Positions 35,670 to 64,000 of a DNA stretch of 64,000 nucleotides are shown here, piece after piece; the first letter of the stretch is position 1, and every line of letters starts with the position of its first letter. The translations under genes were made by a program, and so were the position numbers. The notes below the pieces were generated by a model that saw only the letters and a program-made list of their open reading frames with translations, ran no database searches and was not told the DNA's origin. Origin of the DNA: Haliotis cracherodii (taxonomy: Eukaryota); NCBI RefSeq assembly GCF_022045235.1, contig NW_027266343.1:54436001-54500000 (forward strand). The letters run 5' to 3'.

Positions 35670-36860
35670 AAAATATACATGACCTCCTACCTCTATTAAT
35701 CCCTGTGATGGACTGTGGGATATACATGACCTCCCACCCCTATTAATCCGTGACATGTGCTATGGGATATACATGACCTGACATCTATTAATCCGTGAAA
35801 TAGGCTGTAGGATATACATGACCTCTGACATCTATTAATCCCTGACATGGGCTGTGGGATATACATGACCTCCAACCTCTATTAATCCGTGACATGGGCT
35901 GTGGGATATACATGACCTCTGACATCTATTAATCCGTGACATGGGCTGTGGGATATACATGACCTCCGACATCTATTAATCTGTGACATAGGCTGTGGGA
36001 TATACATGACCTCTGACATCTATTAATCCGTACCATAGGCTGTGGGATATACATGACCTCCGACATCTATTAATCCCTGACATGGGCTGTGGGATATACA
36101 TGACCTCCAAACTCTATTAATCCGTGACATAGGCTGTGGGATATACATGACCTCCGACATCTATTAATCCGTGACATCGGCTGTGGGATATACATGACCT
36201 CTGACATCTATTAATCCCTGACATGGGCTGTGGGATATACATGACCTTCGACCTCTATTAATCCGTGACATGGGCTGTGGGATATACATGACCTCTGACA
36301 TCTTTTAATCCCTGACATGGGCTGTGGGATATACATGACCTCCGGCATCTATTAATCACTGACTGTGCCACATACATTGGTATTGTTAACAACATATACG
36401 ACCTCTGACTTCTATTAATCCCTGACTGTGAGATGCACATAGGGATTGCATATGTAGCAGGGCGTGGAGTCATCCCTGAGATGACTTCTTGACCTGATCA
36501 GAAGGTCGGTGGTTCGAATCCGATCACAGGACTCGGAAATCTAATGGCCGCTACACATACAACATATACAACCTCCCAACTCTATTAATCCCTGACTGTG
36601 GGATACACATCTGTATTGTATACAACATATACGACCTCCTACCTCTATTAATCCCTGACTGTGGGATACATCTCGGTATTGTATACAACATATATGACCT
36701 CCTACCTCTATTAATCCCTGACTGTGGGATACATCTCGGTATTGTATACAACATATATGACCTCCTACCTCTATTAATCCCTGACTGTGGGATATACATC
36801 TGTATTGTATACAACAACGATGACCTTCCACTTTTATTTATCCCAGACCGTAGGACATGC
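35670..36860. repeat. 47-bp minisatellite grading into a related 63-bp unit after ~36340
   Basis: Shared core atgacctc...ctattaatcc; period 47, then 63. Confidence 0.93.
36453..36555 (+). mobile_element. Solo LTR (internally deleted) of the tRNA-containing TRIM
   Basis: TGTAGC...GCTACA ends, CATA 4-bp TSD, B box GGTTCGAATCC. Matches the reverse complement of 57336-57495. Confidence 0.85.
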
Positions 36861-49160: not shown

Positions 49161-49676
49161 AGTTCATGAATATACTGAAGTCTAGTTGACCTTAATACTC
49201 AGAATCACTATCCTGTGTGAGTATATATTTTTTTGCGTTTTATATTTTTCGCATTACGGACCCACCAGCTCTAATTTTTTACCCCACCGATAGCCACCGA
49301 TAGCCACGTACTCAGTTATTTTATTTGTTATCATCACCTTTTGATAAAAAACATAGGAATTTACCGTTGTAAACTAGTAAAGAGATACATAATTGATCTT
49401 TGTTGATCTCGAAGCCGAACATGAATAGCCCTCCCTTGACAATGGTCAGTGTTGTAAGTGGTAGAATTTTTATTGTTACAAGGGGCTTTATCGTCACAAA
49501 TGGCGGTCTTTTGAGCACAGAATATGTTCATAAAATATGCCAGAGACATTCTGCATTAAAAAATAATGCATCTGGCATCTTCTTTTTTTCCCCTCCTCCA
49601 ACCCTGGACTTTGGGCTGAAAAATTCGTAATCCTAAAAATAAACAAACCTGGCCTTACATGTCTCCCCAGTTGACG

Positions 49677-52185
49677 CAACTGCTACATGTCTATTATGTC
49701 GATCCAACTGCTGCATGTCTATTATGTCGGTCCAACTGCTACATGTCTATTATGTCGGTCCAACTGTTTACATGTCTATTATGTCGGTCCAACTGCTGCA
49801 TGTCTATTATGTCGGTCCAACTGCTGCATGTCTATTATGTCAGTCCAACTGCTGCATGTCTATTATGTCAGTCCAACTGCTGCATGTTTATTATGTTGAT
49901 CCAACTGCTGCATGGCTATTATGTCGATCCAACTGCTACATGGCTATTATGTCGGTCCAACTGCTACATGTCTATTATGTCGATCCAACTGCTACATGGC
50001 TATTATGTCGATCCAACTGCTGCATGTCTATTATGTCAGTCCAACTGCTACATGTCTATTATGTCGGTCCAACTGCTGCATGTCTATTATGTCGGTCCAA
50101 CTGCTGCATGTCTATTATGTCGATCCAACTGCTACATGGCTATTATGTCAGTCCAACTGCTGCATGTCTATTATGTCAGTCCAACTGCTACATGTCTATT
50201 ATGTCGATCCAACTGCTACATGTCTATTATGTCGGTCCAACTGCTACATGTCTATTATGTCGATCCAACTGCTGCATGTCTATTATGTCAGTCCAACTGC
50301 TACATGTCTATTATGTCAGTCCAACTGCTGCATGTCTATTATGTCGGTCCAACTGCTACATGTCTATTATGTCGATCCAACTGCTACATGTCTATTATGT
50401 CAGTCCAACTGCTGCATGTCTATTATGTCAGTCCAACTGCTACATGTCTATTATGTCGATCCAACTGCTGCATGTCTATTATGTCAGTCCAACTGTTTAC
50501 ATGTCTATTATGTCGATCCAACTGCTACATGGCTATTATGTCAGTCCAACTGCTGCATGTCTATTATGTCGGTCCAACTGCTACATGTCTATTATGTCGA
50601 TCCAACTGCTACATGGCTATTATGTCAGTCCAACTGCTGCATGTCTATTATGTCAGTCCAACTGCTACATGTCTATTATGTCGATCCAACTGCTACATGT
50701 CTATTATGTCGGTCCAACTGCTACATGTCTATTATGTCGATCCAACTGCTGCATGTCTATTATGTCAGTCCAACTGCTGCATGTCTATTATGTCGATCCA
50801 ACTGCTACATGTCTATTATGTCGGTCCAACTGCTACATGTCTATTATGTCGATCCAACTGCTGCATGTCTATTATGTCAGTCCAACTGCTGCATGTCTAT
50901 TATGTCGATCCAACTGCTGCATGTCTATTATGTCAGTCCAACTGCTACATGTCTATTATGTCAGTCCAACTGCTACATGGCTATTATGTCGATCCAACTG
51001 CTACATGTCTATTATGTCGATCCAACTGCTACATGTCTATTATGTTGATCCAACTGCTACATGTCTATTATGTCGGTCCAACTGCTACATGTCTATTATG
51101 TCGGTCCAACTGCTGCATGTCTATTATGTCGATCCAACTGTTGCTTGTTTATTATGTTGATCCAACTGCTACATGGCTATCATGTCGATCCAACTGCTAC
51201 ATGGCTATCATGTCGATCCAACTGCTGCATGTCTATTATGTCGGTCCAACTGCTGCATGTCTATTATGTCGGTCCAACTGTTGCATGTCTATTATGTCGA
51301 TCCAACTGTTGCATGTTTATCATGTTGATCCAACTGCTACATGGCTATTATGTCGATCCAACTGCTGCATGTCTATTTTGTCGATCCAACTGCTACATGT
51401 CTATTATGTCGGTCCAACTGCTACATGTCTATTATGTCGGTCCAACTGCTACATGTCTGTTATGTCGATCCAACTGTTGCATGTTTATTATGTTGATCCA
51501 ACTGCTACATGGCTATTATGTCGATCCAACTGCTACATGGCTATTATGTCGGTCCAACTGCTACATGTCTATTATGTCGATCCAACTGCTACATGGCTAT
51601 TATGTCGGTCCAACTGCTACATGTCTATTATGTCGATCCAACTGCTACATGGCTATTATGTCGGTCCAACTGCTACATGGCTATTATGTCGATCCAACTG
51701 CTACATGGCTATTATGTCGGTCCAACTGCTACATGTCTATTATGTCGATCCAACTGCTACATGGCTATTATGTCGGTCCAACTGCTACATGTCTATTATG
51801 TCGATCCAACTGCTACATGGCTATTATGTCGGTCCAACTGCTACATGGCTATTATGTCGATCCAACTGCTACGTGTCTATTATGTCGATCCAACTGCTAC
51901 ATGGCTATTATGTCGATCCAACTGTTTACATGTCTATTATGTCGGTCCAACTGCTACATGTCTATTATGTCGGTCCAACTGCTACATGGCTATTATGTCG
52001 GTCCAACTGCTACATGTCTATTATGTCAGTCCAACTGCTGCATGTCTATTATGTCGATCCAACTGTTTACATGTCTATTATGTCGGTCCAACTGCTACAT
52101 GTCTATTATGTCGGTCCAACTGCTGCATGTCTATTATGTCGGTCCAACTGCTACATGTCTATTATGTCGATCCAACTGCTACATG
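49677..52185. repeat. 28-bp minisatellite (tccaactgctacatgtctattatgtcgg), about 90 units
   Basis: Direct inspection; explains the overlapping plus-strand ORFs. Confidence 0.98.
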
Positions 52186-52437
52186 TTTCTGACATTTCCA
52201 ATACGACAATTCCAGATGCTATCACAAGTATGACATATGGCGTATGGACCATATGGAAGAACAAGTCATGCTCAAACTCAGAATATCTTACATGAGGAAA
52301 CTCAGAAGTTTCCATTAACGTTTGTAAGCAGGAACCAAACAATTCCCTTTGGTCCAACAACACATTTTCACAGCCCCCAACTCTAACATACTCTTGGATT
52401 ACTCAATCACAAAAGGTATCATTTTATATATTGGTAT

Positions 52438-54350: not shown

Positions 54351-57335
54351 TGCTGTTACAACCATGACCATGCTCTAGGCAAATATTCAAGCACATAATG
54401 GAATGATAATTGAAATCAAATTCAAACATAAAAACTACCAGATTGCTCGATGCCTGAATAATGGTTTCAAATAGAATTACCAAGACTTGTACTTTCCAGG
54501 CAGCATCTGGTACCAGGTAATGTAATCAATAAAAAAAAGAGCCTATTAATAGATCTCTGAGATAACATACTTAGCTGAGGTAATTAGATAATAGCATCAC
54601 GTAGTCAGACGTATATCACACTCATCAGAAACATCCGTGTCAAAACACTTCACAATGATCATATTAGACAATTCAACATTTGTGTGCACGATAATCACAA
54701 GTGAAATTGAAAGTGCTCAAAACTCATACTTGTACTATTGGATGGAAGTTTCCACTGATTATGTATATCCTCATTGGCATGCATGTGACACCTCCCAATC
54801 TGTCCAGGCGGGTCCTGGATTATCATGTTTGACCCCGACGGGCCTTTGTCTTACAATCAACTGGTAATTAAATCCATATGGTGAATAATTTCTAACAATG
54901 TAAACTGTAAGGAAAACTGGGATAGTCGTAACAGCTAGGTGTCTGAAGGGTAGAACTTGAAATAAATAACCAGCGTGTTTATTCCTGTATAATCCAATAC
55001 AGACTTTGATACATGTGACTGTTATAGATGACGTTATTGGTTATCAGATTTATCAGAAACTATTCTAAAATGTCACTTTACCTCAACGCCATTAAACTCT
55101 CAGAAATGAAAACAAAATATGACCAGCAAGCGCTGTCTCCTGAAACAAGACTATGCGTGATTGGTTGAATCGGTAGTTGAAATAACACAAGCAGGGTTCC
55201 TCATAGGGTTTCAAAGTCAAAGTATAAGTCAAACTCATGTTAATCTGCCTTTTACCTGACATCGTGACTCGTTTGCACAAAAATATCAACACATCAAACT
55301 TTGAGAGAATGTATCATGTGATTTGAATTAATATCCTCAAATTGTTTGTTTGTTTCATAAATGAAGGCTCAGAAAGCATGTTCAATGAGTATGGAAAAGG
55401 AGAACTGACTTTTGTGGTATCAAGCCACTGTAAATTGACGGATCGTGATGACTGTTTAACATATAAATTTCATGGTTGCTTTATTACAGTTCTCCCTGAT
55501 AGATGCAAGTATCTCCCTATTCCTAAAGGCCTAATGTCCCTGACACCCTCTGACAATTTATCACATGTATGCAATGGTAAATATGCAGATATACATCCTG
55601 ATAAGCTAGAAACACTGGGCACAGCTACAATGTATAACAAGTGTATCACAAGATGTGTGTTGTGTGTTGAACATACCTTGTGATTTGCCTACAAACAAAC
55701 TGGACAAATCACACATGTAGTAATATCCTTATCAAACATCAACAAGTGAATTACAGATATTCCATACCACCCTGACTACAGTCTATGTTGCCATGGGAAC
55801 CTGCCCTGTCCAGACATACTTCAATACGTGTATTAGATCCTTGGACGAACAGTAACCACATACACACAAACTTATCAATTCAGTGATTTCTATTTGCTAG
55901 TTGAAAAAAGCTCTGGAAAAAGTCAATCCTTTCAACTAATACATGAATCAAACAATCTTGAATATATTCTAGTTCCACAATAACATTACTTTTTGAGAAA
56001 TAAACAGATTATTTGAGAAGAGAAAGTGAAGATAACAGATTTGAGAAAATAACATTTACACCATGCATGGTTGTCCAGAAACCAGACTGGTGCTGCCATT
56101 ACACAACGAATGAAACATGCTACCAAAACATAGGTGGTTTGATCACAGCGTGATTACACACTATGCCGCCATGTTAGGACAAGTGAAAAAACGTGAGTGA
56201 AGTAACCGAAAAAATCCTAGGGATCAATCAAGAAACGTGCGATGGATACCAGGCAGTGTTGTCATGCATAGCTCATGTGCAGAGGGCAGTGTGAGAAAAC
56301 TGCTGGCAAAATCAAATATAAATTTGATTTTTCCAAGCTAGTTTTGAGGCAATAAATACCCATGAAATCTGTCAAATCCATTGCTAAAGCTGGTGGGAAG
56401 TAGCCCGTAGTCCGATCTTATACATTCGTACACTGCCAAACTCCAATGCTGCCATTACCGTCCGGACCTACAATCAATTACTGAATGGCCGTGCAATGCC
56501 ATTACTGTGCCAAGACAATACCTACTACCTCTCTCCCTCCTTCACACTCGCCTTGGACTTCAACATCAAATACTAAATACCTAGATTTGCATCAGCCTAA
56601 AGCACAACGCTTAGCTCCAATGCAATTATGCTTTATTTCTGGGACGATTTATTGTACAGCTCTGAAGGCATGCAATTGTCCTTCTGTCATCTGTGAGAGA
56701 GAAGGGCACTCGATCAAAAACTCGGCCACATAGTTGATTTGGGACATATTATCCCCACCAATCATTTTCCCAGTTCGGCCATATTAGCATTCCCATACTG
56801 TTTTCCTAATCACCTTCCCCAGCTGCTACCTGTAGATACATGTGTCTACACCACTACTTATTGTTCAAACTGTAGAGTGTATTGATAGGCTGTTATTCAA
56901 TACATTGTTGGCCATAATTGTTTATGATAAATAAATAAGCAATTTTCATTTTGGTTCTGGCAAAGTTAGCAATTATTCTAATTTGTGGCTCATATAATGA
57001 CCTGTAAAGTACTGAGAATTAGGGAAATCTCATTATTTATGGTATGGAACATGAGTACAATTAAAAAAAAAAATTTTAAATATCACATCAAATGAATTAA
57101 GGATAAGATGGTGAACTTGAGACATTTAAAGATGTACTAGTAATAAAGAAACAAATTAATATATCAGGCTATTATTGAAATAAAAAAGAAAAGTAGGAAA
57201 ATAATATATTCAAACGACATTCTCTTTGAAAATGAGAAGAATAAAAGAACTGTAAATATGTAAAAAGGTCAGTGATCTATCAAAACATTTTCATTAAACC
57301 CCGGTCCTTACTGTGAATGTCTTTATCCATATGTA

Positions 57336-57735
57336 TGTAGCGGCCATAAAATTTCTGAGTCCTGTGATGGGATTCGAACCATGGACCTTCTGATCCGAGG
57401 TCGGACGCCTTGTCCACATGACCAAAGAGGTTAACCTGTCAGCAAGCCGACAAGGTAAGGATGTCATCTGTGGGATGACTCTACGCCCTGCTACATACTC
57501 CTACGTCAGGAGGCTTATAAGCTTACTGAGGCTTACTTTGCTCAAATTTAATTTGAACATACACAGCCCCACGTTGGACGCCAATGCAGCGGCCATAAGA
57601 TTCCCATGATGGGATTCGAACCACAGACCTTCATATATGAGGTCGGATGCCTTGTCCACATGACCAAAGAGGTTAACCCTGTCAGCAAGCTGACAAGGTA
57701 AGGATGTCATCTGTGAGATGACTCCATACCCTGCA
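57336..57735 (-). mobile_element. Complete TRIM (non-autonomous LTR retrotransposon) with a tRNA-like sequence inside each LTR (Helenus/TRIMp3-like)
   Basis: LTRs at 57585-57735 and 57336-57495 (TG...CA); PBS TGGCGTCCAACGTGGGGC at 57566-57583; (A)TGTA in both flanks; 89-bp internal region. Confidence 0.9.
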
Positions 57736-58535
57736 ATGTAAAAGGGGGGTTCCACCTGTCACACAACAATGGTGTGAGACTGAATGTTACATGATATGAA
57801 CATAATCTTCCAGTATCTGTAAGTGATGACACCTGGACCAGACAAACCAGTGACTGGAAATGACACAAGTTACCAGGAATAGAGTTTCTTGAGATCATTC
57901 CTTCCTCTACACAATCAGTTGTGTACTCACCACCAAAAGAAGCGCGAACTATAGAAACATAGAGAGAAGTATGAACGTTATGAAGAGATGTTTCCAATGT
58001 GTGCCAATTAATGACAAAACTAACAGTCAGTCATGTGTTACAACAACGTGTCCTTATTCTTATCATGATATGCTGCACATGATTTCCAAACTTTACACAC
58101 TAATCCTGCATGAGACAATGGTGCATCTCGAGTCATGGATCTATGACGTCACATGTGATGCGTTCATGAGCATCGATTCACACAACAGACCAGCATGTTC
58201 TTTTGTGCATCAAACCAATATAACACCTCTTGAATATGAGTCATTCGGCATATATAAACCAACATGTATGGTATTCATGTTTCTTTTGTGAGTGAGTATA
58301 TAACCTGTTTTCACAACAGGGCTGTTTGTTTGTTTGATTTTCAATTCCTCACTCAGCACTACTCCAGACATATACCAGCTGCCTGTAATAATCGAATCTT
58401 GACCAAATACAACAGGGAGTACAACAGCTGTTGTATGGATTACATTGATGTTGACGGATGTTGACGGATGTCATGGCATGACAGATTAACTTTAGTAACA
58501 TGAAGGAATCAGTGATCTTTAACTTCTTTTGAGTA

Positions 58536-58536
<1 letters not shown>

Positions 58537-58582
<46 letters not shown>

Positions 58583-58718
58583 AAAATGAGGTAAATGTTC
58601 ACTCGGTGTACATGTAATATATAATAAAATAATAACGTCCATGTTAGTCTATCATCTTCTTTATATCAGTTTATAAAGATATAAAGAAGATGATGGACTA
58701 ACGTGGACTTTATTATTT

Positions 58719-58769
<51 letters not shown>
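58537..58769. repeat. Two (TA)n tracts enclosing a 47-bp-arm inverted repeat (58621-58724)
   Basis: Arms differ at 3 positions; 10-nt loop. Confidence 0.9.
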
Positions 58770-62002: not shown

Positions 62003-62479
62003 AGGTGGCTCTGCTGGAATCCTAATTTTCTGTTAGAACAGGAGTGAGTGAATATTGTTTTAAGACAGTCAGCAATATTACTGCTATGTCATGATAGCCT
62101 GTATATAATAATGTCTTGACCACGCGACTGACAGCATGAACAATGACACATACTGTTTAGGTATGACGACACACTATACACCCATCCTTGTAGAAAGTAA
62201 ACTGATGTCTTTCTCATATGTCAAACACTACAAACAAGCATCAGCCATGGAATATTTATTCTTGCTTATAATCACAACCCAATCAAATAGTATTTTTTAA
62301 ATTAAGAACAAAAATAGGTCCAGCAGTGACTGTCAGGAGCTGTTGATATGTCAACATTAAAGTTTTATTGCTGATTATTAGGATGGTTTCAGTCCTGGCT
62401 GATTAATGTCAACACAGTTGATTAATTCACCCAACAACATAAACATTGGAAGGGCACGCATCACTCTGGGCACTACAGA

Positions 62480-64000
62480 GGTGCTTGTGAGGAAAGGACT
62501 TGTTGCTCGGCCATGATCAGCTGACCTACAAATGGCAGCAGGTGCTTGCACTGCTCTGATAACCATGGAGAGTGCTGGAGAGTTTGGGAGAGTGCGGGAG
62601 AGTGTGGGAGAGTGCTGGAGAGTGCTGGAGAGTGTGGGAGAGTGTGGGAGAGTGTGGGAGAGTGCTGGAGAGTGCGGGAGAGTGCGAGAGAGTGCGGGAG
62701 AGAGCGGGAGAGCGTTGGAGAGTGTGGGAGAGTGTGCAGGAGAGTGCTGGAGAGTATGGGAGAGTGCGGGAGGGAGCAGGAGAGTGCAGGAGAGAGTGGG
62801 TGAGTGCCCCGAGAGCGTGGGAGAGTGCGGGAGAGTGCAGGAGAGTGGGGGAGAGAGTGGGAGACTGCACCTGAAGCACCTGTGAGGAAAGCACCTGTTG
62901 CTCGGCCATGATCAGCTGGTGCTTGCACTGCTCTGATAACCATGAAGAGTGCTGGAGAGTGTGGGAGAGAGTGGGAGAGTGCTGGAGAGAGCGGGAGAAT
63001 GCTGGAGAGAGCGGGAGAATGCTGGAGAGAGCGGGAGAATGCTGGAGAGAGCGGGAGAGTGTGGGACGGTGCAGGAGAGTGCGGGAGAGTGCTGGAGAGT
63101 GCTGGAAAGTGCTGGAGAGTGTGGGAGAGTGCTGGAGAGTGTGGGACAGAGCGGGAGAGTGCTGGAGAGTGTGGGAGAGTGTGGGAGAGTGTGGGAGAGA
63201 GCGGGAGAGTGCTGGAGAGTGCTGGAGAGTGTGGGAGAGTGTGGGAGAGTGTGGGAGAGTGCTGGAGAGTGCGGGAGAGTGCGAGAGAGTGCGGGAGAGA
63301 GCGGGAGAGCGTTGGAGAGTGTGGGAGAGTGTGCAGGAGAGTGCTGGAGAGTATGGGAGAGTGCGGGAGGGAGCAGGAGAGTGCAGGAGAGAGTGGGTGA
63401 GTGCCCCGAGAGCGTGGGAGAGTGCGGGAGAGTGCAGGAGAGTGGGGGAGAGAGTGGGAGACTGCACCTGAAGCACCTGTGAGGAAAGCACCTGTTGCTC
63501 GGCCATGATCAGCTGGTGCTTGCACTGCTCTGATAACCATGAAGAGTGCTGGAGAGTGTGGGAGAGAGTGGGAGAGTGCTGGAGAGAGCGGGAGAATGCT
63601 GGAGAGAGCGGGAGAATGCTGGAGAGAGCGGGAGAATGCTGGAGAGAGCGGGAGAGTGTGGGACGGTGCAGGAGAGTGCGGGAGAGTGCTGGAGAGTGCT
63701 GGAAAGTGCTGGAGAGTGTGGGAGAGTGCTGGAGAGTGTGGGACAGAGCGGGAGAGTGCTGGAGAGTGTGGGAGAGTGTGGGAGAGTGTGGGAGAGAGCG
63801 GGAGAGTGCTGGAGAGTGCTGGAGAGTGTGGGACAGAGCGGGAGAGTGCTGGAGAGTGCTGAAGAGTGTGGGAGAGTGCAGGAGAGTGCAGGAGAGTGGG
63901 GAGAGAGTGGGAGAGTGCACCTGAAGCACCTGTGAGGAAAGGACTTGTTCCTCGGCCATAGTCAGCTGACCTACCAATAGCAGCTGGTGCTTGCACTGCT
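62480..64000. repeat. Compound repeat: GA-rich decamers (ggagagtgtg/ggagagtgct) punctuated by an ~80-bp module; one near-exact 597-bp duplication
   Basis: Module at ~62485, 62865, 63462 and 63915; period 597 between the 2nd and 3rd. Confidence 0.95.

What the first reader, a model, noticed from the sequence alone, without database searches (positions are those of the whole stretch)
57331..57740. Intact ~400-bp TRIM with a tRNA-Arg-like Pol III promoter in its LTRs
Seen: two ~150-160-bp LTRs ending TG...CA. An 18-nt PBS (TGGCGTCCAACGTGGGGC, 17/18 to the tRNA-Lys(CTT) 3' end) lies one base after the 5' LTR. TGTA (or ATGTA) is duplicated in the flanks. The 89-bp non-coding interior has two palindromes (GCTTATAAGC and TCAAATT-T-AATTTGA) and only a weak PPT. 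Each LTR contains GTGGACAAGGCGTCCGACCTCGGATCAGAAGG...GGTTCGAATCC, close to tRNA-Arg(TCG). Known: small-RNA-derived LTR promoters define Cassandra (5S) and the recently described Helenus group (tRNA). Inference: this is a Pol III-driven LTR parasite mobilised by a tRNA-Lys-primed autonomous element, possibly a family not yet catalogued in this lineage.
Basis: partly seen in the sequence, partly recalled or inferred. Interest (0 to 1): 0.8.

Follow-up and report, generated by a model that had tools for sequence, protein, structure and literature searches.

The report
Old abalone mini-retrotransposon with tRNA-like repeats
This is a real but old and decayed copy of a roughly 420-bp non-coding LTR retrotransposon whose repeats contain a degenerate tRNA-Arg gene; it is a new family, in what is very probably an abalone, of a class named Helenus in 2024, and a Gypsy element likely to copy it was found in the same genome.

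Summary
On the minus strand, 57336-57736 is LTR (152 bp) - T - 18-nt tRNA-Lys(CTT) PBS - short interior - LTR (160 bp), flanked by a 4-bp duplication (TGTA on the + strand). The own genome gives about 1,850-2,000 candidate hits. Across 19 full-length copies, 16 have perfect 4-bp TSDs. Ends are TG..CA, and there is a G-rich PPT, solo LTRs with TSDs and LTR-int-LTR-int-LTR arrays. It is therefore a TRIM, not a tandem SINE.

Each LTR carries a tRNA-Arg(TCG)-derived segment (D loop to T arm; z about 12 against the genome's own gene). It has an A-box-like motif, a perfect B box at tRNA spacing, and a T4 run. It is not a functional tRNA.

This matches Helenus (Kojima 2024), which lists no gastropods, so it is a new member of a known kind. 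The scan had already found this family twice elsewhere in this genome.

"Intact" is overstated: the LTRs are 89% alike, the 5' LTR start and T-run are lost, and the PPT is eroded.

New here is a low-copy Ty3/Gypsy family with the same 10-nt LTR start, the same GCTACA end and the identical PBS. Two loci join TRIM and Gypsy parts at the PBS. Pol III transcription remains inferred.

The parts
57332..57335 (.). Target-site duplication, left copy (TGTA on the + strand, TACA in element orientation).
   Evidence: It is identical to 57737-57740. The family TSD is 4 bp, perfect in 16 of 19 full copies.
57336..57495 (-). 3' LTR, 160 bp, TGTAGCAGGG...GGCCGCTACA. This is the better-preserved LTR: 93% identical to the LTR of copy L003.
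57361..57424 (-). tRNA-Arg(TCG)-derived module of the 3' LTR. The A-box-like TGGTCATGTGG lies at 57413-57423 and the B box GGTTCGAATCC at 57370-57380. The anticodon-loop remnant is CCTCGGA, with C where U33 should be.
   Evidence: One search aligns a typical family LTR (copy L003, 93% identical to this 3' LTR) to the genome's own tRNA-Arg(TCG) gene from L050. ARAGORN and Rfam are negative. Coordinates in this copy are read.
57348..57351 (-). T4 run just after the tRNA-like module, 12 nt before the end of the 3' LTR. It is a candidate Pol III terminator and R/U5 border.
   Evidence: in the 19 held copies, T4+ runs lie 12-16 nt before each LTR end, with one exception (L016). The genome's own tRNA-Lys and tRNA-Arg genes are followed by T4 or T5.
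57496..57507 (-). Eroded polypurine tract (GACGTAGGAGTA). The family form is GACGGGGGAGTA.
57496..57584 (-). Interior, 89 bp, non-coding. It includes the spacer T (57584) and the PBS. It is shorter than the 100-110 bp of other copies, and its middle part is rearranged.
57566..57583 (-). Primer-binding site TGGCGTCCAACGTGGGGC, 17/18 complementary to tRNA-Lys(CTT) 3' end plus CCA.
57585..57736 (-). 5' LTR, 152 bp. Its start is degenerate (TTGCAGGG), it has a 7-bp deletion that removes the T-run, and its anticodon region is mutated.
57604..57667 (-). Decayed tRNA-like module of the 5' LTR. The A-box-like motif is at 57656-57666 and the B box at 57612-57622.
57737..57740 (.). Target-site duplication, right copy (TGTA on the + strand).
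36453..36555 (+). Second family member in the window: a solo LTR with an internal deletion of about 58 bp. It is flanked by a perfect 4-bp TSD, CATA, at 36449-36452 and 36556-36559.

Best explanation
Window 57336-57736 (minus strand) is an old, no longer mobile copy of a non-autonomous miniature LTR retrotransposon (TRIM) of the Helenus type. The host is very probably the black abalone.

Shown:
- The family integrates like an LTR retrotransposon. It has TG..CA ends, a fixed 4-bp TSD, a preferred TG-N4-CA target, solo LTRs and LTR-int-LTR arrays.
- It carries an 18-nt site complementary to the host tRNA-Lys(CTT) 3' end, followed downstream by a G-rich PPT.
- Each LTR contains a decayed tRNA-Arg(TCG) gene fragment with A-box-like and B-box motifs at tRNA spacing, followed by a T4 run.

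Inferred:
- Reverse transcriptase and integrase are supplied in trans by a low-copy Ty3/Gypsy family of the same genome. That family has the same first 10 and last 6 LTR bases and the identical PBS, so its integrase and primer fit the TRIM.
- Two loci where TRIM and Gypsy parts are joined exactly at the PBS suggest that the two RNAs meet in one particle.

Inferred and less certain (about even odds):
- Genomic RNA is made by RNA polymerase III from the tRNA-like module. It would start about 10 nt upstream of the A box in the 5' LTR, read through the weak T4 there, and end at the T4 of the 3' LTR.
- The tRNA-like segment would then be R, the first 65-70 nt of the LTR would be U3, and the last 12-16 nt would be U5.
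For: Family and layout:
- 54 matches scored out of 1,850 candidates, most covering positions 7-405 of the 410-nt query.
- the LTR-PBS-interior-LTR layout is conserved in 17 aligned copies.
- perfect 4-bp TSDs in 16 of 19 full copies.
- solo LTRs with TSDs (L033, L036, window 36453-36555).
- tandem arrays (L008, L012, L013, L014, L020).
- 109 exact copies of the 32-nt junction LTR-end/T/PBS/interior, none in the reversed control.

Primer:
- the host tRNA-Lys(CTT) 3' end is the exact complement of the family PBS.

tRNA-like module:
- the LTR aligns to positions 15-68 of the host tRNA-Arg(TCG) gene, score 39 against shuffles of 14.1 +/- 2.1.
- T4 runs lie only near each LTR's 3' end.

Partner:
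- the Gypsy family encodes RT, RNase H and integrase, with a 1370-aa open pol frame in one copy.
- Its LTR starts TGTAGCAGGG and ends GGCTACA, and it has the identical 18-nt PBS.
- TRIM-Gypsy joins at L076 and L077.

Known class:
- Kojima 2024 describes the same architecture, 4-bp TSDs in animals, Lys PBSs and Gypsy partners.
Against: - No transcript evidence. The runs guessed to be RNA hold LTR-bearing contigs, but contigs show no starts, ends or strand.
- The T4 run lies between the putative Pol III start and the PBS in the 5' LTR of most copies. The host's own tRNA genes are followed by T4-T5 runs, so many Pol III transcripts would stop before the PBS.
- The A-box-like motif departs from the consensus at two fixed positions.
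- The acceptor stem, U33 and the T stem are damaged, and ARAGORN and Rfam see no tRNA.
- Partnership with the Gypsy family rests on shared termini, the shared PBS and two composite loci. One of those loci is structurally complex and could have arisen by DNA recombination.
- Host identity rests on assembly size and contig number only.
Confidence: 0.85

Rival explanations
1. The element is a TRIM transcribed by RNA polymerase II, from the conserved upstream part of the LTR or by read-through from host genes. The tRNA-Arg-like segment would be a passenger, for example an old SINE or tRNA insertion, with no promoter role.
For: - The T4 run in the 5' LTR should stop Pol III before the PBS. Host tRNA genes are followed by T4-T5 runs.
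- The first 65 nt of the LTR hold two family-conserved palindromes, GTCATC-N5-GATGAC and GTCAGC-TT-GCTGAC, that could bind factors.
- LTR copies occur inside longer contigs of runs guessed to be RNA.
- The tRNA module is too decayed for ARAGORN or Rfam.
Against: - The LTR has no TATA box and no AATAAA or ATTAAA signal (read).
- The B box is a perfect GGTTCGANNCC, and the A-to-B distance is 43 nt against 44 in tRNAs.
- The same layout of tRNA-like module, T-run and short tail recurs in many published Helenus LTRs. This argues that the module is kept for a reason.
Confidence: 0.3
2. The structure is not a retrotransposon but a tandem duplication of a tRNA-derived SINE, or a unit of a 250-bp satellite.
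For: - Tandem arrays with a period of about 255-267 bp exist at several loci.
- One locus has a 49-bp minisatellite made from the start of the LTR (L009).
Against: - Most copies are dispersed single LTR-int-LTR units with TG..CA ends and a fixed 4-bp TSD (16 of 19 perfect).
- A PBS matching host tRNA-Lys sits one base after the 5' LTR, and a PPT sits directly before the 3' LTR.
- Solo LTRs carry their own TSDs.
- There is no A-rich or microsatellite tail.
- The tRNA-like part lies in the 3' half of the repeat, not at its 5' end.
Confidence: 0.02
3. The LTRs are working tRNA-Arg genes spread by retrotransposition, so the family expands the host tRNA pool.
For: - Kojima 2024 raises this possibility for a few bivalve and fungal Helenus families.
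- The anticodon TCG is kept in many copies.
Against: - No LTR in 25 loci is called a tRNA by ARAGORN, and Rfam finds none.
- The acceptor stem is absent, position 33 is C, the anticodon stem has a C-A mismatch, and the T stem is shortened.
Confidence: 0.01

Closest known systems
Helenus (TRIMp3), Kojima 2024, Biology 13:119 (PMC10886601). The closest relatives are the tRNA-Lys-primed bivalve families such as Helenus-1_PiIm of Pinctada.
   Same: - Size class: about 420 bp, with LTRs of about 160 bp and an interior of about 100 bp.
- A tRNA-like module with A and B boxes in the 3' part of each LTR, followed by a T-run and a short tail.
- A tRNA-Lys(CTT) PBS one to three bases after the LTR, and a G-rich PPT ending GAGTA directly before TGTAG.
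- 4-bp TSD, tandem arrays, a non-functional tRNA and a Gypsy-type partner.
- By eye, the tRNA-like module is about two-thirds identical to that of Helenus-1_PiIm, including the CTCTTTGG just upstream.
   Different: - The host is very probably a vetigastropod, whereas the paper lists molluscan Helenus only from five orders of pteriomorph bivalves.
- Of about a dozen 6- to 16-nt strings from this LTR, only the generic B-box string, the 6-nt strings and four short strings in Helenus-1_PiIm occur in the published consensus file.
- The module is tRNA-Arg-like, while the paper's functional-looking bivalve cases are tRNA-Thr.
- PBS complementarity is the full 18 nt.
- A partner sharing LTR termini as well as the PBS is identified here. 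For animal Helenus the paper reports similarity to autonomous elements only at the PBS region.
Cassandra (plant TRIM with 5S rRNA in its LTRs) and Ajax (nemertean TRIM with a 5S promoter).
   Same: A miniature LTR retrotransposon whose LTRs carry a small-RNA gene fragment with an internal Pol III promoter. Tandem LTR-int-LTR arrays are also shared.
   Different: The module here is tRNA-derived, not 5S. Rfam finds no 5S in the region. TSDs are 5 bp in Cassandra and Ajax and 4 bp here.
tRNA-derived SINEs (SINE2), including the molluscan MESC SINEs with a tRNA-Arg-derived head (Matetovici et al. 2016, PMC4758252).
   Same: Short, non-coding and high-copy, with a tRNA-Arg-like Pol III module. Such a SINE is a possible source of the LTR module, as Kojima proposes for Helenus in general.
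   Different: SINEs have the tRNA head at the 5' end, a LINE-type tail and variable TSDs, and no PBS, PPT or terminal repeats. None of that fits here.
biv-TRIM (TRIMs in bivalves, Sci Rep 2019, PMC6934838).
   Same: A molluscan TRIM of similar size with tandem arrangements.
   Different: biv-TRIM has no recognisable PBS, and the passages read mention tRNA similarity only within its inner domain. The abalone family has a canonical 18-nt PBS.

Membership tests
[quoted passage not shown] | Short non-coding element bounded by two LTRs (published range 311-1263 bp). | tested here: met
   This copy is 401 bp; other copies are 378-428 bp. LTRs are 152 and 160 bp here and 161 bp in typical copies. No ORF is present.
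[quoted passage not shown] | PBS just downstream of the 5' LTR and PPT just upstream of the 3' LTR. | tested here: met
   The 18-nt complement of host tRNA-Lys(CTT)+CCA lies one T after the LTR. GACGGGGGAGTA abuts the 3' LTR in the family and is eroded in this copy.
[quoted passage not shown] | tRNA-like sequence in the LTR with box A (TRGCY..YGG) and box B (GGTTC) conserved. | tested here: met
   The LTR aligns with the host tRNA-Arg(TCG) gene at z of about 12. Box B, GGTTCGAATCC, is exact. Box A, TGGTCATGTGG, has T where the motif has C. The A-to-B distance is 43 nt.
[quoted passage not shown] | 4-bp target-site duplication in animal families. | tested here: met
   16 of 19 full copies and 3 solo LTRs have perfect 4-bp TSDs.
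TRIMp3 (TRIMs transcribed by RNA polymerase III) | Genomic RNA actually made by Pol III from the internal promoter. | not testable with these tools
   Only assembled contigs of runs guessed to be RNA were available. They show LTR-bearing contigs but no starts or ends. Kojima 2024 states that this is unvalidated for Helenus too.
Cassandra / Ajax | 5S rRNA-derived sequence in the LTRs. | tested here: not met
   Rfam scan of 56500-58500 at E up to 10 gives no 5S rRNA match. The module aligns to tRNA-Arg instead.
tRNA-derived SINE (SINE2) | tRNA head at the 5' end, a LINE-derived or A-rich/microsatellite tail, variable TSD length, and no PBS or terminal direct repeats. | tested here: not met
   The tRNA-like part lies at LTR positions of about 72-135 of 161. 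The ends are TG..CA, the TSD is fixed at 4 bp, and PBS and PPT are present.
Retrozyme | Hammerhead ribozyme motifs in the terminal repeats. | tested here: not met
   No hammerhead family among the Rfam matches at E up to 10.
Ty3/Gypsy (Metaviridae), for the proposed autonomous partner | pol domain order RT - RNase H - integrase, LTRs with TG..CA ends, and a tRNA PBS. | tested here: met
   Pfam finds RVT_1, RT_RNaseH, Integrase_H2C2 and rve in that order on a 1370-aa frame of L078, and a PNMA-like gag hit on L075. The LTRs are about 865 bp and 98% alike. They start TGTAGCAGGG and end GGCTACA, followed by AATT and the Lys PBS.

The most novel reading that the evidence does not exclude
The abalone family may be the first animal Helenus for which a specific autonomous partner can be named from more than the PBS. 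The partner is a low-copy Ty3/Gypsy family sharing the first 10 and last 6 LTR bases and the full 18-nt tRNA-Lys PBS, with natural TRIM-Gypsy joins at the PBS. That would make trans-mobilisation of a putative Pol III-driven LTR parasite directly testable. Together with the resemblance to a Pinctada family, it would also extend the molluscan Helenus lineage from pteriomorph bivalves to gastropods. This implies either an origin before the bivalve-gastropod split or repeated birth from tRNA-Arg-headed SINEs.
Probability: 0.45. Interest if true: 0.45.

Novelty: new member of a known kind. Interest (0 to 1): 0.3.

Why it matters
- Helenus-type elements are the LTR-retrotransposon counterpart of SINEs. 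They were described only in 2024 and none has been shown experimentally to use Pol III.
- A large family with many well-preserved copies in abalone, paired with an identifiable Gypsy partner, offers a concrete system for two open questions. How can a Pol III transcript with a terminator inside its own 5' LTR serve as a retroviral-type genome? What does a TRIM need to share with its helper?
- For annotation, these LTRs are a source of false tRNA-like or SINE-like calls in gastropod genomes.
- As a discovery it is incremental. The class is known and this scan had already met the family at other loci.

Tried and rejected
- ARAGORN on the window and 24 loci, and Rfam on 56500-58500 at E up to 10, found no tRNA in any LTR. 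A functional tRNA is rejected.
- An exact pattern for a U33-bearing Arg anticodon arm plus B box found only nine TRIM copies. A looser pattern then found the real tRNA-Arg(TCG) array.
- The tandem SINE or satellite reading is rejected on TSDs, PBS, PPT and solo LTRs.
Recent activity could therefore not be confirmed from sequence. The only indications are the many equal-scoring LTR hits and the 109 exact junction 32-mers.
- The first fetch of two minus-strand Gypsy loci took the wrong side (L073, L074) and was repeated.
- The RNA question: no run on record as RNA holds the stretch. The two runs guessed to be RNA are contigs and give no ends.
- The published Helenus consensus file could be compared only by short-motif look-ups and by eye. 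Sequences from a paper are not stored loci, so I did not type them into the alignment tools.
- Organism names of the runs are coded. Host identity rests on assembly statistics alone.
The two-row consensus printed by the alignment tool was not used.
Full report
**What is at the coordinates**

Read on the minus strand, window 57336-57736 has this order:
- a 152-bp repeat (57585-57736);
- one T;
- the 18-nt string TGGCGTCCAACGTGGGGC (57566-57583);
- a short non-coding stretch;
- a 160-bp repeat (57336-57495).

The two repeats are 89% identical (Jukes-Cantor distance 0.115). The downstream repeat runs TGTAGCAGGG...GGCCGCTACA. The upstream one ends GCTGCA, has lost part of its start (TTGCAGGG), and has lost seven bases that include the only T-run. 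TGTA (+ strand) flanks the element at 57332-57335 and 57737-57740. The ATGTA alternative is not needed. The quoted tRNA-like string is exact only in the 3' repeat.

**It is a family, and the family behaves as an LTR retrotransposon**

- A search of the window's own genome with the 410-nt stretch gave 1,850 first-look candidates. Dozens of matches covered positions 7-405. An LTR alone gave 2,014 candidates.
- In 30 fetched loci the order LTR-interior-LTR recurs. Several loci hold LTR-int-LTR-int-LTR arrays.
- An alignment of 17 single copies with flanks shows sharp ends TGTAGCAGGG...GGCCGCTACA.
- The same alignment shows a T followed by TGGCGCCCAACGTGGGGC, an interior of about 100-110 bp, and GACGGGGGAGTA directly before the 3' LTR.
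- Of 19 full-length copies, 16 have a perfect 4-bp duplication of the flank. Two have 3 of 4 and one is ambiguous.
- Solo LTRs with their own 4-bp TSDs exist at L033 and L036.
- A further solo LTR lies in this very window at 36453-36555, with TSD CATA.
- The exact 32-nt junction LTR-end/T/PBS/interior-start occurs 109 times in the genome and never in the reversed control.
- About half of the insertion sites read TG-NNNN-CA, a palindromic preference typical of integrases.

**Primer**

- A pattern search found a large tandem array of genes whose 3' end is GCCCCACGTTGGGCG.
- ARAGORN calls these genes tRNA-Lys(CTT).
- With CCA added, this is the exact complement of the family PBS.

**The tRNA-like module**

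- The genome's own tRNA-Arg(TCG) genes were located in another tandem array.
- A typical LTR aligns with positions 15-68 of that gene, from the D loop through the T arm. The local score is 39, against 14.1 +/- 2.1 for 2,000 shuffles, none of which reach it.
- The same test with tRNA-Lys is not significant.
- The module keeps an exact B box (GGTTCGAATCC). The A-box-like TGGTCATGTGG lies 43 nt upstream of it, the spacing found in tRNAs.
- It is not a tRNA. The acceptor stem is gone, position 33 is C, the anticodon and T stems are damaged, and ARAGORN and Rfam find nothing in 25 loci.
- A T4 run follows the module, 12-16 nt before the LTR end. In the 19 held copies, all but one of the T4+ runs lie at this position in an LTR.
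- The host's own tRNA-Lys and tRNA-Arg genes are followed by T4 and T5.

**Host**

- The genome has 1,182,234,246 bases in 80 contigs.
- The published primary assembly of the black abalone, Haliotis cracherodii, has 1,182,252,637 bp in 81 scaffolds.
- The match is close enough to make that identification very probable, but it is indirect. Earlier notes of this scan say the same.

**Comparison with what is known**

- Kojima (2024, PMC10886601) named TRIMs with a tRNA-derived sequence in their LTRs Helenus.
- Animal families there have 4-bp TSDs, canonical PBS and PPT, tandem arrays and mostly non-functional tRNA-like parts. Their similarity to autonomous Gypsy elements lies at the PBS.
- tRNA-Lys(CTT) is the commonest primer among the bivalve families.
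- In molluscs the paper lists only five orders of pteriomorph bivalves, and no gastropod.
- Every defining feature was tested here and met, so the abalone element is a Helenus.
- Most characteristic LTR strings tested are absent from the published consensus file. The exceptions are 6-nt strings, the generic B-box string (in two fungal LTRs), and four short strings in Helenus-1_PiIm of Pinctada.
- By eye, the tRNA-like module of Helenus-1_PiIm is roughly two-thirds identical to the abalone one. The two share the CTCTTTGG just upstream and the ATCAGAAGGT of the anticodon arm.
- Published bivalve LTRs also show a T-run followed by a short tail ending in ACA. The architecture is therefore shared.
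- I could not align these sequences with tools, because text from a paper is not a stored locus.
- No paper in the library describes Helenus or TRIMp3 in gastropods.
- Matetovici et al. 2016 report molluscan SINEs with a tRNA-Arg-derived head, and MESC SINEs in Haliotis. This is a possible source of the module under Kojima's SINE-into-LTR model, and it was not tested.

**A candidate autonomous partner**

- Searching for the exact PBS followed by anything but T returned 11 places. Three of them belong to a different element.
- Extended loci show an element of about 9 kb with LTRs of about 865 bp that are 98% alike.
- One copy has a 1370-aa open frame with RVT_1, RNase H, Integrase_H2C2 and rve in Gypsy order. 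Another has a PNMA-like gag match.
- Its LTR begins TGTAGCAGGG, identical to the TRIM over the first ten bases, and ends GGCTACA.
- After the spacer AATT comes the identical 18-nt PBS. AAAAGGGGGG precedes the 3' LTR.
- Beyond these terminal motifs and the PBS, BLAST finds only chance-level 10-15-nt matches (E 0.7 or higher).
- The family is rare: 13 candidate places, four of them 87-100% alike over the leader. The TRIM outnumbers it by two orders of magnitude.

**Composite loci**

- At L077 (contig 7) a TRIM LTR is joined through AATT and the PBS to the Gypsy interior.
- Further on, the Gypsy 3' LTR is joined through AATT and the PBS to a TRIM interior and TRIM LTR.
- A pattern search found this second type of join only once in the genome.
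- At L076 (contig 2) a TRIM LTR, T and the PBS run into a diverged Gypsy-like leader.
- These joins at the shared PBS fit template switching between co-packaged RNAs. The L077 locus also carries a duplicated flank and a microsatellite, so DNA-level recombination is not excluded.

**Age of this copy**

- LTR identity is 89%. The PBS is mismatched, the PPT is eroded and the interior is rearranged, so this copy is old and inert rather than intact.
- Contigs of two related organisms (names coded) match the flanks at about 97%. They stop within a base or two of the element's edges.
- One contig continues about 45 nt into the 5' LTR (records 1, 3, 10, 13). The insertion is therefore probably older than the split of these species, consistent with LTR divergence about 3.5 times the flank divergence.
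- Held copies have LTR pairs 88-97.5% alike.
- Many LTRs score identically against one query and lie 267 bp apart, which implies 424-bp elements. This hints at a young burst, as earlier notes claim.

**Mechanism**

- Shown: integration with 4-bp TSDs at TG..CA ends, a tRNA-Lys-complementary PBS, a PPT, and recombination to solo LTRs and arrays.
- Inferred: proteins come from the Gypsy family, whose integrase would recognise the shared termini and whose particles use the same primer.
- Inferred with about even odds: Pol III makes the genomic RNA from the tRNA-like module. The module would then be R, bounded by the start about 10 nt upstream of the A box and by the T4 run.
- The difficulty is that the same T4 lies in the 5' LTR before the PBS and must be read through. 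This resembles the problem retroviruses have with their poly(A) signal.
- In favour of Pol III: the LTR has no TATA box and no poly(A) signal.
- In favour of Pol II: conserved palindromes in the first 65 nt could be upstream promoter elements.
- The contigs from runs guessed to be RNA contain LTR copies but cannot decide.

**Verdict**

The element is a new member, in a new host class, of a class described in 2024. This scan had already found the same family at two other places in this genome. The added value here is the named Gypsy partner with shared termini, the TRIM-Gypsy joins, the target-site preference and the terminator problem.

Noticed in passing
window 36449-36559: A second member of the same family: a solo LTR with an internal deletion of about 58 bp and a perfect 4-bp TSD (CATA). 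It is inserted between two copies of a roughly 30-bp repeat (tctattaatccctgactgtg...).
   Followed up: partly
L077 (G000 contig 7, 22784000-22793999), positions 893-7420: A composite locus, in this order: TRIM LTR; GT microsatellite; truncated TRIM LTR; AATT-PBS; Gypsy interior with deletions; Gypsy 3' LTR; AATT-PBS; TRIM interior; TRIM LTR. The flank after the first LTR repeats the flank after the last one, so a segmental duplication is also involved.
   Followed up: partly
Insertion sites of about 20 family copies (L002-L069, window 36449 and 57332): About half of the targets read TG-NNNN-CA around the 4-bp duplication (10 of 19 with TG upstream, 11 of 19 with CA downstream). This is a palindromic target preference that mirrors the TG..CA ends of the LTR.
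   Followed up: partly
L040-L049 (contig 2, about 45.99-46.02 Mb) and L050-L061 (contig 1, about 30.24-30.28 Mb): Very large tandem arrays of tRNA genes. There are at least 221 matches to the tRNA-Lys(CTT) 3' end, with periods of 297 and 212 bp. There are at least 170 matches to the tRNA-Arg(TCG) anticodon arm, with a period of 307 bp. The Arg array includes a unit whose anticodon is mutated to TCA, which ARAGORN labels SeC.
   Followed up: partly
L009 (contig 78, 1316360-1319769), positions 2020-2775: A 49-bp minisatellite of about 15 units built from the first 45 nt of the TRIM LTR (the GTCATC..GATGAC palindrome region), directly downstream of a TRIM copy.
   Followed up: no
Family LTR positions of about 17-60 (window 3' LTR 57437-57480, minus strand): Two family-conserved palindromes upstream of the tRNA-like module: GTCATC-CCACA-GATGAC and GTCAGC-TT-GCTGAC. 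They are possible factor-binding or RNA hairpin elements of unknown role.
   Followed up: no
window 57953-58300 and 58475-58735: The DNA just right of the element consists of other high-copy repeats. Contig depth runs to thousands in all four runs laid, including those guessed to be RNA.
   Followed up: no
window 2900-4350, 49650-52300 and 62470-64000: Long tandem-repeat tracts give spurious long ORFs (SLTHSLTH-type, a 27-aa period, and PALS/HSL-type). Runs of N (gaps or masking) lie in 2900-4200.
   Followed up: no
G000 contig 14, 8550541-8551611 (not fetched): An exact TRIM LTR-PBS junction lies about 800 bp upstream of a match to the Gypsy leader (83% identity). This may be a third TRIM-Gypsy composite.
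   Followed up: no
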